IMG/VR virus record: IMGVR_UViG_3300018891_000001
Coordinates: 1 to 64,000 of that record
Strand: one strand, 5' to 3'
DNA: 64,000 nt
Shown: piece by piece, positions 22,737 to 32,502 of the stretch
Position numbering within the stretch: position 1 is the stretch's first letter
Layout: each line of letters opens with the position of its first letter
Notes under the pieces: model-generated
What the model saw: the letters and a program-made list of their open reading frames with translations, nothing else
Database searches by the model: none
What the model was told of the DNA's origin: nothing
Made by a program: the position numbers and the translations under genes

Positions 22737-22811
22737 TGCCTAGTAGCTCAGTGGTAGAGCAATCGGCTGTTAACCGATCGGTCGCAGGTTCGAATCCTGC
22801 CTAGGCAGCCA
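22737..22811 (+). tRNA. tRNA-Asn (GTT)
   Basis: Acceptor stem TGCCTAG/CTAGGCA; anticodon stem ATCGG/CCGAT with loop CT-GTT-AA; T arm GCAGG-TTCGAAT-CCTGC; encoded CCA. Confidence 0.97.
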
Positions 22812-27870: not shown

Positions 27871-28278
27871 ATGACAGTGTTAGCAAGTAACCAACCATAT
27901 CAACGAGTAGATGATGGAGTTGGCGCAGGTCTTGTCACAGGAGCCATTCTTGGTAAGATGGCTCACGGAGCTGTAGGAATGGGACTTGGATATAAAGCTA
28001 TTCAAGCATCTGGAGGGATTGATGCGCTTACTGAAAGAACAACAAGGGATATGGAGCGTTTTCAAAGGATGACCAAAACTCCAAAACAACAAATGTTTGC
28101 AGGAATAAGGGTGGCAGATAGAGCAGCAAGAAAAGCTATTGATAGCATGGATGACGGGCTTCTTAAAAATGTTGCAAGAACCGGATATGGAAGTACGAAA
28201 CGTGCCATGATTTCCGGCGGTCTTAGTGTTTTAGCCGGAAGTATACTGGGAGCTAGTATTGATGCGATGAATGATTAA
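27871..28278 (+). CDS. SNxPxQR-family paralogue 2
   Basis: N-terminus MTVLASNQPYQRV. Confidence 0.75.
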   Translation: MTVLASNQPYQRVDDGVGAGLVTGAILGKMAHGAVGMGLGYKAIQASGGIDALTERTTRDMERFQRMTKTPKQQMFAGIRVADRAARKAIDSMDDGLLKNVARTGYGSTKRAMISGGLSVLAGSILGASIDAMND

Positions 28279-28291
28279 GGAGGGATCATAT

Positions 28292-28714
28292 ATGCCATTA
28301 GATAGTAATCGTCCAGTGCAAAGAGTAAATAATGGTGGAGATGGTATTTGGGATGGTGCTGGATGGGGGATAGTTGCTGGCACAGGAGCAACAGCCCTTG
28401 CTTATGGTGCCTCTGTTCACGGAGCTAAGCATCTCCGAGATTTGAATACTACGTTAACAGGCGTGAGACAAGGCAAATTGTATGAGAAGAATGCTCGATG
28501 GGCGGCATTTGGAAAACGCCATTATTCAGAAGCAGCATTACAAACCAAAGCTCTCAAAATGGAGCAACGAGCGGCACGAATGAATTCTATGTTAGGAAAT
28601 GTACAAAAAGCTGGTGATTTTGCATTCGGTTCGTCCAAGCGAGCTATCATTTCAGGGGCTACAGGATTGCTAGGTGGTATGATAGCAGGAACTATTACAG
28701 ACTCCATGAATTAG
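28292..28714 (+). CDS. SNxPxQR-family paralogue 3
   Basis: ATG 28292 after AAGGAGG; MPLDSNRPVQRV. Confidence 0.75.
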   Translation: MPLDSNRPVQRVNNGGDGIWDGAGWGIVAGTGATALAYGASVHGAKHLRDLNTTLTGVRQGKLYEKNARWAAFGKRHYSEAALQTKALKMEQRAARMNSMLGNVQKAGDFAFGSSKRAIISGATGLLGGMIAGTITDSMN

Positions 28715-28726
28715 TGGGTGATTTGG

Positions 28727-29131
28727 ATGTTAGTTTCTAATCAACCAATTCAACGTATTCATGCCCAAGAGGATAGTAATAGTACCTTGTACCGGAATAT
28801 AGGGGTTCATGTAGGATTAGGTGTTGCTATGCAAGCTGGACAAGAAATGACTCTTCAAACCTTATATCGAAGCACCAAAAATCCCAAATTAAAAGAAAGT
28901 CTCCGAACGGCTTTATATGTGGATTCAAACATTCAAGAGTCAGGTATCGTGAATCCCATTACAGGTACGAATTATTACGCCAAAATGAAAGAGGGAAAAT
29001 TGAAAAATCTTATCGGGAAAATTCCTGTGTATGGTCAAAGTACATTCAAAGGCCGTGCATTAGGTTATGGAATGGCAGTTGGAGGAGGAATACTGTCAGG
29101 AATATTACAGACCCAAATTACTAAGCAATAA
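28727..29131 (+). CDS. SNxPxQR-family paralogue 4
   Basis: MLVSNQPIQRI. Confidence 0.7.
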   Translation: MLVSNQPIQRIHAQEDSNSTLYRNIGVHVGLGVAMQAGQEMTLQTLYRSTKNPKLKESLRTALYVDSNIQESGIVNPITGTNYYAKMKEGKLKNLIGKIPVYGQSTFKGRALGYGMAVGGGILSGILQTQITKQ

Positions 29132-29142
29132 CGGGTGACAGT

Positions 29143-32100
29143 ATGAGTGTACAAGCCATTGAACTAACAGAAAGACAAATGGACGAATTAGAATCGGAGA
29201 TTCGAACGGATCCGGTAAAATGGGCATACTGGAAACTCAAAGATCCAAAAGGAAGACCGTGGAAAGCCCGTTGGTACCAAAAGAAAATCATTGACGGTAT
29301 TATGAAAGGTGATCGTCGAATTGCCGCTCGTATGGGACGACGGGTAGGAAAAACAGAAACCATGGTTGTCTTTTGTTTATGGTATGCCTTTCATCATAAA
29401 AATGCTCGCTTGCTAATTGTTGCTCCGTATGAGCATCAAGTCCGATTAATATTCATGCGATTATCAGAATTGGTGCGAGATAGTGATGAACTGCATCATT
29501 CTGTAACCATTACCAAAAATCCGTTTATTGCTTCTTTTGGAAATGGTTCTAAGATTATGGGGTTTACAGCAGGGGCCAACTCTGGTACACAAGCGGGTGC
29601 GAGCTTGCGTGGTCAGCGTGCCGATTGGATTTTTATGGACGAAGTCGATTACATGAGCCGTGAAGCGATTGACGCTACCATTGCAATTTCTTATGAAGAC
29701 CCAAAACGAATTGGAATTTGGGTATCTTCTACACCTACCGGAAAGCGAGATTTCTTCTATGAAGTTTGTACAAATCCTGATACGGGATACAAGGCTTATC
29801 ATTTCCCATCTCATGTAAACCCGGATTTTGATGAACGCATGGAAGGCGAGCTTCGTGCAACGATGACCGTACAAGGTTATATTCACGAAGTTGAAGCGGA
29901 GTTTGGAGAAGAAACCATCGGAGTATTTAGCAAATCAGCGGTAGAGCGAGCAAAATCGCAATATCTTTACAGTTATCGAGAATTAAACGTGTGGGAGAAG
30001 GAACAGTACAAAAAACAGGGCTACAACATAGATGACATTATCTTCTTCCCGGAGTATACTAAAAGAAATCCAGCCCCTCCTGCGATTCGGGTTGTAGGGG
30101 TAGACTGGGATAAAAACGCAGCTTGCTAAGTAAATGGGTGGTATGATGCTCATATGCTAAGATTCCACTCAAAAGAGAATCTCATTAAGCTATATGAGTA
30201 CATGTATGAAAATCAGACAGTATGCTTACCAAGAAAGTTAGAAAAATATCATGAAGCATTAGCAAGATGCAATTATTGTCCCCTTCAGGAGTAATCCTGT
30301 CGATATAAACCGGGTGAATTGCTGGAATCCCCTTAGAGCCAATTTGACCACAACGTAAGGATGAAATAAGCCTAAACGTGACGGTTTGAAAACAAATTGG
30401 ATTGGGTAATCAGCAGCCAAGCTCCGAACAGGAGAAGGTTCAACGACTATCTCGTAAGAGAGTAGGGTTCAAGTGAACTCGAAGTGCCCGGCCCCTTTTA
30501 CAAGAGGGTGATGATATAGTCTGAGCTTACATGAAAGTGTAAGAGGGTTGTCGGAAACGGGCAATCCGTAACACAACTGAAATATGCAGAAGCTACTCAA
30601 ATTATTGTTACAGAATTTGATGAGTTATTAAAGAAATTCCGAGTAGCAAAGAGATATGAGATTCCTCGTGGAGATTTTACGTACGACAATGCCGTACAAA
30701 AATTAATTGAAATCAATGAAATTTGGAATCCAAAATTCTATTACATTGATGCGGGGCATGGTAATGTAGCATAATTTGTTTTCACCCTGTATAATCAAAT
30801 TATTAACAAAAAAGGGTGAGAGATTATGTTTCCTGAATGGTATCAAGAAGCAGAAAGATTATATGTAGATGAAAAGCTTTCTTATACAAAGATTGGACAA
30901 ATACTTGGTGTTGGAAGAAAAACAGTAAGCCACTATTTGCGAAAAGGTGGACATGAATCGAATTTAAAATTTTATCCTAATGTAGACCACAGCAAGTATA
31001 GAAAGTATCAAATTGACGAATCAGTTTTTGAAACCATAGATACAGAAGAAAAAGCATACTGGCTTGGAATGTTATATGCTGATGGCAATGTGTCTGATCG
31101 TTCAAATGATATAGAAGTCACTTTACAAGCAGAAGATTATAATCATCTGTTAAAGTTAAGGGATTTCTTTAAAACTGATAAACCCGTCTACAAAAAGGAT
31201 AAAAAGAAATACGATAAAACCTATGAAGGTTACAGGCTTATTATTTGTAGTAAGAAAATCAAACAAGATTTGATTCGATTAGGTTGTTTACCTAGAAAAT
31301 CACATATACTTCAATTTCCTACAACAGAACAAGTCCCAGAACATTTGATGTCTCACTTTGTGAGAGGATATTTCGATGGCGATGGTTGTATTACATTTGC
31401 TAATAAAGGAGTTACATTAGTCATTGAGTTATTAGGGACAGAAGATTTTCTTACTCAATATTTAATTTGGTCTGAAAGAAATCATCATCGCATTCATGAT
31501 TTTAAACATTCGAAGGAAACCAAAAGAGTCCAACACTTTGGTGAAGAAGCTAGATTTATATTAAATCGCTTATATGTAAATGCCAATGTGTATCTTGAAA
31601 GGAAATATAATCTTTATAAAAATTATGCATTGCCGTCTAATGGGGAAACTCATTAGAGTATCAGAGCGGAATGAAGCGGGAAAGCTGAGATGCTAACCCG
31701 AACCGAAGGCTAGGCAAATCCTAGTCAGGGGCAGAGCATAGGAGCTGACCGGTAACAGGAATAACGCTCCCACGAGGCCGCTCCACCCAAACCGTCAAGG
31801 TCGGTGGGTGAAAAGGTATGCCGAGCTTGCGGGAAATGAACCGTAAGAAGTAGAGGATAAAAAGCCTTTACGATAACAATACTGGAGTATCAAATTGAAA
31901 TGCTTCGAAAATATGGACGAGATAATCCAGAAAGCGGCATGCTTCAAAAGGTGAAACGAATCCATTTCTCTGAGAAAATTGAAATTCGTGATCCTGGTAC
32001 AAGAGAAATTGACAAAAAAGATGTCAAAAACTTTATGGTTAATCAAACTAGTATTCTTCTTGAACGGGATCAATTGGTGTTATCACCGTTTGACGATATG

Positions 32101-32502
32101 GTGTGGAAGCAAATGATGGATTATCAAGTTGTTCGAATTTCTCAAAATGGTAAGCCAATTTATACATCGGAAAATGAGCATGCATTAGATGCGCTCATGT
32201 TAACGATTTTAGGATTTACAATTGAGTTTCCGAACATCACAAAAATTCTTGAAGAAATCAAAGTAGCACGAAAGGTGTTACCATTTCAAAATAAAATTCA
32301 AGAATCTCTTCAGGAAAAAGTGTTTGGCGGAGAACGGGATGTTTATCAACCTATTAAATCAAAACCGGAAAGAGAAGAGAAAGATAATCCTCGTTGGCAC
32401 TGGCAAAAGGTTGCTTTAGGGTATTCAAAAAGAAAAGTTACCGCTAATCCGTGGGGACGGGGGCAAGCAAAAGGAATAGGTTTGTCACGGTCTAAGTTTT
32501 AA
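29143..32502 (+). CDS. terL: Terminase large subunit; spliced exons 29143-30111, 30580-30762 and 31885-32502 (589 aa)
   Basis: Walker A GRRVGKT, Walker B FMDE, SSTP; exons join in frame as GVDWD|KYAEATQ and YIDAGHG|EYQIEM; C-terminal EHALDA nuclease motif. Confidence 0.92.
30112..30579 (+). mobile_element. Group I intron 1 (468 nt)
   Basis: Exon ends in U, intron ends in G; P1 GGGAU pairs with GUCCC 30278-30282; core GGTGAATTGCTGGAA, AATCAGCAGCCAAG, GTTCAACGACTA and GATATAGTCTG. Confidence 0.92.
30130..30294 (+). pseudogene. Remnant C-terminus of a LAGLIDADG homing endonuclease in intron 1
   Basis: 54 codons ...LIKLYEYMYENQTVCLPRKLEKY..., comparable to LNRLYVNANVYLERKYNLY at the end of the intron-2 endonuclease. 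Confidence 0.65.
30763..31884 (+). mobile_element. Group I intron 2 (1122 nt) carrying a homing endonuclease
   Basis: U|...G boundaries; 10-bp P1 AUGGU|AAUGU pairs with GCAUUGCCGU 31627-31636; variant P7 GCAUA/UAUGC. Confidence 0.9.
30826..31656 (+). CDS. Double-motif LAGLIDADG homing endonuclease with N-terminal HTH
   Basis: AYWLGMLYADG and HFVRGYFDGDG; HTH-like LSYTKIGQILGVGRKTVSHYL. Confidence 0.9.
   Translation: MFPEWYQEAERLYVDEKLSYTKIGQILGVGRKTVSHYLRKGGHESNLKFYPNVDHSKYRKYQIDESVFETIDTEEKAYWLGMLYADGNVSDRSNDIEVTLQAEDYNHLLKLRDFFKTDKPVYKKDKKKYDKTYEGYRLIICSKKIKQDLIRLGCLPRKSHILQFPTTEQVPEHLMSHFVRGYFDGDGCITFANKGVTLVIELLGTEDFLTQYLIWSERNHHRIHDFKHSKETKRVQHFGEEARFILNRLYVNANVYLERKYNLYKNYALPSNGETH

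What the first reader, a model, noticed from the sequence alone, without database searches (positions are those of the whole stretch)
29143..32502. Terminase large subunit split by two group I introns at nuclease active-site motifs
Seen: two introns with U|...G boundaries and demonstrable P1 helices, only 183 nt apart. One is inserted after GVDWD and the other after DAGHG, both in the RNase H-like nuclease domain. Intron 1 has a canonical P7 (GACUA/UAGUC); intron 2 has a variant P7 (GCAUA/UAUGC). The ORF track shows only fragments, so automated annotation would call a broken terL. Inference: DNA packaging requires two splicing events.
Basis: partly seen in the sequence, partly recalled or inferred. 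Interest (0 to 1): 0.6.

Follow-up and report, generated by a model that had tools for sequence, protein, structure and literature searches.

The report
Phage terminase gene with two introns
The DNA-packaging enzyme gene of a 216-kb soil phage is interrupted by two self-splicing-type (group I) introns next to its nuclease catalytic residues, a real but already known kind of arrangement.

Summary
terL has three exons: 29143-30111, 30580-30762 and 31885-32502 (323 + 61 + 205 = 589 aa). Each exon, searched separately, aligns end to end without gap or overlap to the uninterrupted Moorella phage TerL. Eleven IMG/VR relatives carry the three pieces directly contiguous in DNA.

Intron 1 (30112-30579, 468 nt, no ORF) scores 86.9 bits on Rfam RF00028, with P7 GACUA/UAGUC.

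Intron 2 (30763-31884, 1122 nt) gets no Rfam hit. I still call it group I, because:
- A 27-sequence alignment of relatives supports P3-P9.1, including the P3/P7 pseudoknot and P7.1: 88% canonical cells against 69.5% when shuffled, and 41 of 52 pairs with two-sided changes.

Its LAGLIDADG endonuclease ORF lies in the P1 loop, reads through the guide sequence and stops inside P2.

Both introns follow a U, end in G, and form 7-bp P1 helices with an internal U•G. They lie 2 and 4 codons after the predicted first and second catalytic Asp of the RNase H-like nuclease domain.

Splicing itself is inferred; no RNA data were usable. Terminase genes with two or three group I introns are already published, so this is a new member of a known kind.

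The parts
29143..30111 (+). terL exon 1 (323 aa): ATPase domain and the start of the nuclease domain, ending GVDWD
   Evidence: Pfam Terminase_6N 31.9 bits, phrog_2 E 4.5e-27. 44% identical to Moorella phage TerL residues 4-305.
30112..30579 (+). Intron 1: ORF-less group I intron (IA-like, with P7.1/P7.2), phase 0, in-frame stop at its 6th codon, ends in G30579
   Evidence: RF00028 86.9 bits, E 9e-21, at 30259-30543. Absent from 12 homologous terL genes.
30107..30113 (+). Intron 1, P1 5' strand (GGGAU|AA); splice site after U30111
   Evidence: Pairs with 30276-30282 (UUGUCCC) with U30111•G30278. Present in the minimum-energy fold.
30276..30282 (+). Intron 1 internal guide sequence (P1 3' strand), followed by P2 at 30286-30299
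   Evidence: The AUUGUCCC motif and a compensatory change in P2 are shared with the L026 Walker-B intron.
30445..30521 (+). Intron 1 P7 5' strand GACUA (30445-49), then P7.1, P7.2, P3', P8, and P7 3' strand UAGUC (30517-21)
   Evidence: RF00028 alignment.
30580..30762 (+). terL exon 2 (61 aa, KYAEAT...YYIDAGHG): strands beta2 to beta4 of the nuclease domain
   Evidence: 36% identical, gap-free, to Moorella TerL 306-366. Up to 93% identical to IMG/VR relatives.
30763..31884 (+). Intron 2: group I intron (IA-like) with a LAGLIDADG endonuclease gene in the P1 loop, phase 0, in-frame stop at its 4th codon, ends in G31884
   Evidence: Absent from 11 homologous terL genes. A homologous intron sits at the same site in L026. 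Covariation analysis.
30779..30822 (+). Hairpin whose 3' strand covers the endonuclease gene's Shine-Dalgarno region (AGGGUGA)
   Evidence: Fold energy -12.3 kcal/mol, z -1.95. A regulatory role is inferred only.
30826..31656 (+). Intron-encoded double-motif LAGLIDADG homing endonuclease (276 aa) with an N-terminal helix-turn-helix. Its last codons encode the guide sequence and P2.
   Evidence: Pfam LAGLIDADG_3 31.7 bits, phrog_4645 E 1.2e-57. 27% identical to the intron endonuclease of Alicyclobacillus phage MMB025.
31630..31636 (+). Intron 2 internal guide sequence UUGCCGU. It pairs with 30758-30764 (AUGGU|AA), with U30762•G31632.
   Evidence: The same guide sequence lies at the same distance from P2 in L026 and L003, whose 5' exons end AUGGU and UUGGU.
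31637..31656 (+). Intron 2 P2 (8 bp, GAAA loop). The endonuclease stop codon TAG (31654-56) lies in its 3' strand.
   Evidence: G•U changes to U-A in L026.
31664..31783 (+). Intron 2 P3 (31664-69 / 31778-83). It encloses P4 (31677-80/31697-700), P5, P6 (31703-31729), the P7 5' strand (31736-40) and P7.1 (31741-45/31766-70).
   Evidence: Canonical cells: P3 93%, P4 94% (4-bp definition), P6 95%, P7.1 100%, with compensatory changes (except where noted).
31784..31821 (+). Intron 2 P8 (31784-88 / 31806-10), A-rich J8/7, and P7 3' strand UAUGC (31817-21). P7 with P3 makes the pseudoknot.
   Evidence: P8 is 92% canonical and P7 100%. The P8 hairpin is 97% identical to that of the RF00028 intron at genome 144926-54.
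31826..31884 (+). Intron 2 P9 (31826-32/31841-47), P9.1 (31850-56/31865-71), the invariant GAUAAC motif, and the terminal G31884
   Evidence: This is the most conserved segment: 100% identity over 36-37 nt to several Staphylococcus, Clostridioides and Arcanobacterium phage records.
31885..32502 (+). terL exon 3 (205 aa plus stop): the rest of the nuclease domain (HALDAL motif) and a basic C-terminal tail
   Evidence: 39% identical to Moorella TerL 367-545.

Best explanation
The large terminase gene of this 216-kb phage (direct terminal repeats) is one gene interrupted by two group I introns.

The pre-mRNA folds into two ribozymes. Each uses a 7-bp P1 helix with a U•G wobble at the 5' splice site and a terminal G at the 3' end. 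Two guanosine-initiated transesterifications per intron join 30111 to 30580 and 30762 to 31885, giving mRNA for a 589-aa TerL.

Intron 1 is a 468-nt ORF-less ribozyme of the type Rfam models.

Intron 2 belongs to a widespread phage intron family that Rfam's model does not detect. It carries a LAGLIDADG homing endonuclease gene inside the P1 loop. That endonuclease presumably cuts intron-less terL alleles at the DAGHG|EYQ site and spreads the intron by homing.

Both introns sit in invariant coding sequence next to catalytic carboxylates of the RNase H-like nuclease domain, which is the usual niche of homing introns.

Shown: exon boundaries, ribozyme core structure, endonuclease family. Inferred: actual splicing, endonuclease activity and target, and any timing role.
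For: Junctions:
- Gap-free colinearity of the three exons with Moorella TerL.
- An exact 183-nt spacing between the exon 1 and exon 3 matches in phages MTATph1 and 0305phi8-36.
- 11 intron-less relatives with abutting exons.
- The joined sequence at both sites matches the relatives' uninterrupted sequence.

Intron 1: RF00028 86.9 bits.

Intron 2:
- 52 proposed pairs are 88.1% canonical across 27 relatives, against a shuffled mean of 69.5% (maximum 71.7%). 41 pairs show two-sided changes. The P3/P7 pseudoknot and P7.1 are supported.
- The minimum-energy fold reproduces P2-P9.1 (z -3.44).
- Its P8 matches the P8 of a bona fide intron elsewhere in the genome.
- A homologous intron occupies the same site in L026, with its ORF in a different loop.

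Endonuclease: LAGLIDADG_3 and phrog_4645.

Context: the genome holds 7 RF00028 hits, so it is intron-rich.

Precedent: terL genes with 2-3 group I introns, and self-splicing of the SIOphi TerL intron (PMC11878797); B. cereus prophage term-IVS1/2 (PMC2504315).
Against: - No RNA evidence. The only runs found are metagenomes of uncertain type, and their contigs did not lay on the gene.
- RF00028 gives nothing for intron 2, even at E<=10 on the 261-nt core.
- P10 is only about 2 bp for both introns.
- Intron 2's P1 must close an 865-nt loop.
- The structural model used to place the active-site residues is poor overall (mean pLDDT 44.7).
Confidence: 0.9

Rival explanations
1. Intron 2 is not a working ribozyme. 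It is a homing-endonuclease cassette with a decayed intron remnant, so terL is expressed as separate fragments that assemble, as in some phage genes split by endonuclease genes.
For: No Rfam hit for intron 2. No RNA data.
Against: - Exon 2 has no in-frame start codon or ribosome-binding site.
- The core helices are maintained by compensatory changes across 27 relatives, and the invariant G-C and C-G pairs of P7 are intact.
- The boundaries obey the U/G rule and are exact to the codon.
Confidence: 0.05
2. The gene is a decaying pseudogene in a defective element, or an assembly artefact, and the interruptions have no functional meaning.
For: The sequence comes from a metagenome; no isolate is known.
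Against: - All three exons are open and 64-93% identical to relatives (exon 1 73-83%, exon 2 70-93%, exon 3 63-78%), with catalytic motifs invariant.
- An independent contig, L025, is 100% identical across the exons and the endonuclease ORF.
- The record is called complete, with terminal repeats.
- Four runs hold all sampled words of the stretch.
Confidence: 0.03
3. The introns are spliced but depend on a host or phage protein cofactor (maturase-like help from the LAGLIDADG protein or a host chaperone) rather than being truly self-splicing.
For: Intron 2 has a long P1 loop, weak P10 pairings, and an ORF that overlaps the guide sequence and P2. From general knowledge, LAGLIDADG proteins act as maturases in organelles.
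Against: Related phage group I introns, including a TerL intron, self-splice in vitro (PMC11878797). The core looks complete.
Confidence: 0.15

Closest known systems
Group I introns in terL of Bastillevirinae phages, e.g. SIOphi (PMC11878797)
   Same: Large terminase genes split by two or three group I introns, some carrying homing endonuclease genes in loops. Self-splicing was shown for SIOphi TerL. Rfam hits are often partial because of long ORF-bearing loops.
   Different: This is a different phage lineage: a 216-kb relative of Bacillus phage 0305phi8-36, Moorella phage MTATph1 and an Alicyclobacillus element. Intron 2 is entirely missed by RF00028. The endonuclease here is a LAGLIDADG in L1; those terL introns mostly carry HNH/VSR-type enzymes.
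term-IVS1 / term-IVS2 of Bacillus cereus-group prophages, and the phage K1E large-terminase intron (PMC2504315)
   Same: Group I introns inserted in phase in large-terminase genes, with an in-frame stop within the first codons of the intron. Related introns retarget to other genes (tape measure) by changing P1.
   Different: Those are single introns per gene. Insertion sites relative to the catalytic motifs were not compared here.
Staphylococcus phage Twort orf142 (three group I introns) and the T4 td / nrdB / sunY introns (my own knowledge, not checked here)
   Same: Multiple IA-type introns with P7.1/P7.2 lie close together in one phage gene. Endonuclease ORFs are looped out of the ribozyme, and endonuclease translation is restricted by RNA structure.
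   Different: Different host genes. The T4 ORFs sit in P6 or P9 loops and encode GIY-YIG or HNH enzymes, not a LAGLIDADG in L1.
Intron of Alicyclobacillus phage MMB025 DNA polymerase (PV686781, locus L003)
   Same: Closest named relative of intron 2's core: 76% identity over 158 nt. It has the same guide sequence GCCGU, the same P7, and a related helix-turn-helix LAGLIDADG endonuclease (27% identity).
   Different: It interrupts a DNA polymerase gene, and its ORF sits in the P5/P6 region rather than in L1. The record does not annotate it as an intron.

Membership tests
Group I intron: intron 1 | Scores above the curated threshold of Rfam RF00028 | tested here: met
   86.9 bits against a gathering score of 50, full model 1-253, at 30259-30543.
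Group I intron: intron 2 | Scores above the curated threshold of Rfam RF00028 | tested here: not met
   No hit at E<=10 on 30000-32100 or on 31640-31900. Relatives are also missed: L003-L005, L026 and 12 IMG/VR loci. I take this as a gap in the model's coverage rather than evidence against the fold.
Group I intron: intron 2 | Conserved core topology (P3-P4-P5-P6-P7-P3'-P8-P7'-P9 with the P3/P7 pseudoknot) supported by covariation | tested here: met
   27-sequence alignment A1. Canonical cells: P3 93%, P4 94% (4-bp definition), P6 95%, P7 100%, P7.1 100%, P8 92%. 41 of 52 pairs have two-sided changes. Partners slid by one to three columns mostly drop to about 30-65% (the 2-bp P6a reaches 80%). 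The alignment is MAFFT, not fitted to the structure.
Group I intron: both introns | 5' splice site after a U that forms U•G in P1 with an internal guide sequence; intron ends in G | tested here: met
   U30111•G30278 and G30579 for intron 1; U30762•G31632 and G31884 for intron 2. Both P1 helices are 7 bp. The pairing is predicted, not probed.
Group I intron: both introns | Removal restores an uninterrupted reading frame colinear with intron-less alleles | tested here: met
Group I intron: both introns | GTP-dependent self-splicing | not testable with these tools
   Needs in vitro transcription and splicing, or cDNA. The sequencing runs gave nothing usable.
Terminase large subunit | N-terminal ASCE ATPase domain of terminase type | tested here: met
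   Terminase_6N 31.9 bits (cut-off 22), GpA_ATPase 29.5 bits, phrog_2 E 4.5e-27. Profile matches to the T4 gp17 ATPase: E 1.5e-4 in the PDB search, hhalign probability 95.5%.
Terminase large subunit | C-terminal RNase H-like nuclease domain with catalytic Asp residues at the ends of beta1 and beta4 and in a later helix | tested here: inconclusive
   No Pfam or PDB sequence hit for the C-terminal half. In the model of the uninterrupted homologue L015, residues 310-417 (pLDDT 65-87 locally, 44.7 overall) best match the E217 TerL nuclease domain: Z 10.1, rmsd 2.7 Å, 98 residues. T4/RB49 gp17, G20c and Sf6 nucleases score Z 6.6-7.7. D319, D378 and D484 (L015 numbering) are invariant in 10 homologues. 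No residue-level superposition is available.
LAGLIDADG homing endonuclease | Pfam LAGLIDADG domain above threshold, and two LAGLIDADG-type motifs in a single chain | tested here: met
   LAGLIDADG_3 31.7 bits (cut-off 22.5), two stretches. The motifs ...LGMLYADGN... and ...RGYFDGDGC... are visible in the translation. Cleavage activity was not tested.

The most novel reading that the evidence does not exclude
Intron 2 may represent a large clade of phage group I introns that has no covariance model. An exact 3' motif occurs in at least 109 IMG/VR contigs, and 68 phage records match by blastn. Members interrupt terL, DNA polymerase, tape-measure and other genes.

In one sub-lineage the LAGLIDADG reading frame runs through the internal guide sequence and ends inside P2. 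A ribosome translating the endonuclease would then physically prevent P1/P2 formation. Endonuclease translation and terL splicing, and therefore packaging, would be mutually exclusive on one transcript and could be timed against each other.
Probability: 0.25. Interest if true: 0.55.

Novelty: new member of a known kind. Interest (0 to 1): 0.4.

Why it matters
For annotation. Gene callers will report three terL fragments and a stray endonuclease in this phage. Rfam-based intron screens will find only one of the two introns. More generally, they will miss a family present in over a hundred viral contigs, so intron counts in phage genomes are underestimates.

For biology. This clade gives a tidy natural series:
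- Intron-less alleles.
- One relative with an intron in the Walker B motif plus a same-site version of intron 2 that carries a different LAGLIDADG gene in a different loop.
- This phage, with introns beside both nuclease carboxylates.

The series illustrates how ribozyme and endonuclease modules are exchanged, and how introns settle at catalytic motifs. None of this changes current understanding. Multi-intron terminase genes and their self-splicing are already published.

Tried and rejected
- RNA evidence. The look-up of sequencing runs returned four biocrust metagenome runs from one study, kind guessed as DNA, possibly the source of the sequence. Read laying placed only one unrelated 712-nt contig on parts of intron 1 and nothing on the exons. 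This says nothing about splicing.
- Rfam on intron 2 and its relatives: no hit.
- Group II intron: rejected. There is no GUGYG start, no domain V, no RF00029 hit and no reverse transcriptase.
- Intein: rejected. In-frame stops occur 4 and 6 codons into the insertions.
- The 46-aa ORF at 30154-30294 inside intron 1's P1 loop: no family hit. I treat it as non-coding.
- Locating the nuclease by sequence: no PDB hit with one protein. The profile hit only the ATPase of T4 gp17. Pfam and PHROGs find nothing in exons 2 and 3.
- AlphaFold on a 10-sequence alignment gave a poor model (pLDDT 44.7). Only residues about 300-410 are usable.
- The large protein searches were not used, because the family scans and phage tblastn settled the protein's identity.
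- Exons were handled one by one by reference, and a natural uninterrupted homologue (L015) stood in for the whole protein.
- One script call returned no answer and was repeated.
Full report
**What the window is.** The window is the first 64 kb of a 215,870-bp IMG/VR virus record with direct terminal repeats, rated complete. Its TerL is closest to those of three things:
- Moorella phage MTATph1.
- Bacillus phage 0305phi8-36 and related jumbo Bacillus phages.
- A 198-kb contig of Alicyclobacillus shizuokensis.

The runs that hold the sequence are biocrust metagenomes. The host is therefore probably a member of the Bacillota.

**The observation.** The ORF list shows three in-frame terL pieces and one 276-aa ORF between the second and third.

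| Piece | Coordinates | Notes |
|---|---|---|
| Exon 1 | 29143-30111 | ends GVDWD |
| Exon 2 | 30580-30762 | KYAEAT...DAGHG, 61 aa |
| Exon 3 | 31885-32502 | starts EYQIEML |

I tested each exon separately and by reference.

- Against the uninterrupted 547-aa TerL of Moorella phage MTATph1, exon 1 aligns up to residue 305, exon 2 to 306-366 and exon 3 from 367. There is no gap or overlap at either junction.
- In 0305phi8-36 the exon 1 and exon 3 matches are likewise exactly 183 nt apart.
- A scan of IMG/VR gave 13 related loci. In 11 of them (73-83% identical in exon 1) the three pieces abut to the nucleotide. One, L025, is an identical copy carrying both insertions.
- The flanking nucleotides of the intron-less alleles match the joined sequence at both sites.

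The junctions 30111/30580 and 30762/31885 are therefore as well established as sequence comparison allows. At site 1, a run of A's on both sides means the join could slide by up to 3 nt without changing the product. The U-before / G-at-end rule picks the stated position.

**Intron 1 (30112-30579, 468 nt).**
- Rfam RF00028 matches 30259-30543 over the full model at 86.9 bits (gathering score 50). P7 is GACUA / UAGUC, and a 33-nt insertion between P7 and P3' forms P7.1/P7.2, which marks it as IA-like.
- The guide sequence is not near the 5' splice site. GGGAU|AA (30107-30113) pairs with UUGUCCC (30276-30282), giving U30111•G30278. The P1 loop is about 160 nt and holds no credible ORF.
- P2 (30286-30299) follows. 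The same AUUGUCCC-plus-P2 arrangement, with one compensatory change in P2, occurs in a related intron of locus L026.

**Intron 2 (30763-31884, 1122 nt).** Rfam finds nothing here, even at E<=10 on the 261-nt core alone. It also finds nothing in relatives. The evidence that it is nevertheless a group I intron is comparative.

- The 3' 255 nt resemble many phage sequences. A 19-base motif from P9.1 hits at least 109 IMG/VR contigs.
- I aligned 26 non-identical full-length cores with the window using MAFFT, not fitted to any structure. I then scored the helices I had drawn by hand.
- Canonical cells per helix: P3 93%, P4 94% (4-bp definition), P5 82%, P6 93-95%, P7 100%, P7.1 100%, P8 92%, P9 71%, P9.1 84%. 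The lower values for P9 and P9.1 come from one-base length variants that MAFFT shifts.
- Overall, 88.1% of cells are canonical, against 69.5% (maximum 71.7%) in 500 column shuffles. 41 of 52 pairs show changes on both sides. Sliding the partner by one to three columns mostly drops the values to about 30-65%; the 2-bp P6a is the exception at 80%.
Its third pair switches A-U to G-C in six sequences. Its first two pairs, G-C and C-G, are invariant, as expected for a guanosine-binding site.
- The P7 5' strand lies inside P3 and the P7 3' strand outside it. That is the P3/P7 pseudoknot that defines the group I core. The P7.1 hairpin between P7 and P3' points to subgroup IA.
- The single-sequence fold recovers P2-P9.1 apart from the pseudoknotted P7 (-84.2 kcal/mol, z -3.44).
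- The P8 hairpin is 97% identical to the P8 of an RF00028-positive intron elsewhere in this genome.

**Where the endonuclease gene sits.** Locus L026 has a homologous intron at exactly the same terL site (74-80% identity in two blocks). There the ribozyme starts 9 nt after the splice site: GGU|AAGCAAAUU-GCCGU-P2. In the window the matching GCCGU lies at 31632-36, after the ORF.

- The 276-aa ORF (30826-31656) is therefore an insertion in the P1 loop. P1 is AUGGU|AA (30758-64) paired with UUGCCGU (31630-36), with U30762•G31632.
- The ORF's last codons encode the guide sequence and P2. Its stop codon lies in the 3' strand of P2. The same layout is seen in relatives L096 and L072.
- The protein is a double-motif LAGLIDADG enzyme with an N-terminal helix-turn-helix: LAGLIDADG_3 at 31.7 bits, phrog_4645 at E 1.2e-57.
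- It is related to the endonuclease of the Alicyclobacillus phage MMB025 polymerase intron, which sits in a different loop.
- L026's same-site intron carries a different LAGLIDADG (phrog_11023) in the P7.1 loop. Ribozyme and endonuclease have evidently been combined more than once.
- A hairpin at 30779-30822 covers the ORF's ribosome-binding site. A role in limiting endonuclease translation is inferred from the T4 precedent (my own knowledge).
- Both introns are in phase 0 and have an in-frame stop within 4-6 codons. This feature was already noted for Bacillus prophage introns (PMC2504315).

**Position in the protein.** The ATPase half is a standard terminase ATPase. The C-terminal half has no sequence-level match.

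I folded a natural uninterrupted homologue, L015 (82% identical), with ten relatives. The model is poor overall (pLDDT 44.7), but residues about 300-410 reach 65-87 and show the order beta1-beta2-beta3-helix-beta4-helix. An exhaustive structure comparison ranks the phage E217 TerL nuclease domain first (Z 10.1, rmsd 2.7 Å, 98 residues). The T4/RB49 gp17, G20c and Sf6 nucleases, and other RNase H-like enzymes, score Z 6.6-7.7.

In that fold the catalytic carboxylates end beta1 and beta4; this is established knowledge of RNase H-like nucleases. Here those are the Asp of GVD and the Asp of YID, both invariant in the family.
- Intron 1 lies two codons after the first Asp.
- Intron 2 lies four codons after the second Asp.
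- L026's extra intron splits the Walker B D|E.

'At active-site motifs' is thus reasonable, but it rests on topology and not on a residue-level superposition.

**What is not shown.** Splicing itself is not shown. The four runs found are of uncertain type, and their contigs did not lay on the gene.

**Comparison with what is known.**
- Group I introns in large-terminase genes were reported in Bacillus cereus prophages and phage K1E in 2008 (PMC2504315).
- A 2025 survey found terL genes with two or three introns in Bastillevirinae and showed self-splicing of one of them (PMC11878797).
- That survey also noted that Rfam covers some intron subgroups badly.

This finding is therefore a new member of a known kind. 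Its modest extra value has two parts. First, intron 2's family escapes RF00028 altogether yet is common in phage data. Second, the endonuclease frame overlaps the guide sequence and P2, which suggests, without showing, a direct conflict between endonuclease translation and splicing.

Noticed in passing
Genome G000 outside or at the edge of the window: 65124-65458 and 66177-66289 (+), 144689-144985 (+), 145674-145941 (+), 173787-174082 (-), 183708-183959 (-): Six further RF00028 matches, three of them above threshold. The phage is intron-rich. Flanking frames show two introns in a DNA polymerase III alpha-like gene, one in an SNF2-type helicase, one in a UvrD-type helicase, and one (two half-matches around a LAGLIDADG ORF) in an unidentified gene at 63.6-67.8 kb. 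Three carry LAGLIDADG ORFs.
   Followed up: partly
L026 4488-5000 and 5655-6680 (IMGVR_UViG_3300000208_000002): A relative's terL lacks intron 1. It has a 513-nt RF00028 intron (95.8 bits) between the D and E of Walker B. It also has a 1026-nt homologue of intron 2 at the identical site, carrying a different LAGLIDADG gene (phrog_11023) in the P7.1 loop.
   Followed up: yes
L090 2552-3314 (-) and L058 1805-2552 (-): A tape-measure gene in small IMG/VR contigs holds an RF00028-type intron and, about 260 nt downstream, an intron of the intron-2 family that Rfam does not report. This is the same pairing of intron types as in this terL.
   Followed up: partly
window 31656-31663 and 31885-31892; also 31658-31661 with 31872-31875: The 8-mer GAGTATCA occurs just after P2 and again as the first 8 nt of exon 3. 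The J2/3 segment (A-U/G-UAUCA, conserved in the family) is complementary to the invariant GAUAAC near the 3' end. The minimum-energy fold pairs UAUC with GAUA. This may be a long-range contact that positions the 3' splice site. It is unexplained.
   Followed up: partly
window 27871-28278, 28271-28714, 28718-29131 (+): Three tandem, overlapping or abutting ORFs of 135-147 aa lie directly upstream of terL, with similar N-termini (SNQP.QR) and Gly-rich ends. The first two are paralogues (34% identity, E 3e-11). In 0305phi8-36, small virion protein genes lie upstream of terL.
   Followed up: partly
window 22737-22811 (+): The only tRNA gene in the window is tRNA-Asn (GTT).
   Followed up: no
L138 / L020 (NZ_BCQV01000007.1, 197,999 bp): An uninterrupted terL relative (75% identity) lies on a contig of about 198 kb in the Alicyclobacillus shizuokensis NBRC 103103 assembly. 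The contig is about the size of this phage, which hints at the host group and at a possibly extrachromosomal or contaminating phage genome.
   Followed up: no
window 30381-30475: The P6-P7-P7.1 part of intron 1 is 86% identical over 95 nt to an unannotated stretch of Escherichia phage nepoznato, so similar intron cores occur across distant host groups.
   Followed up: no
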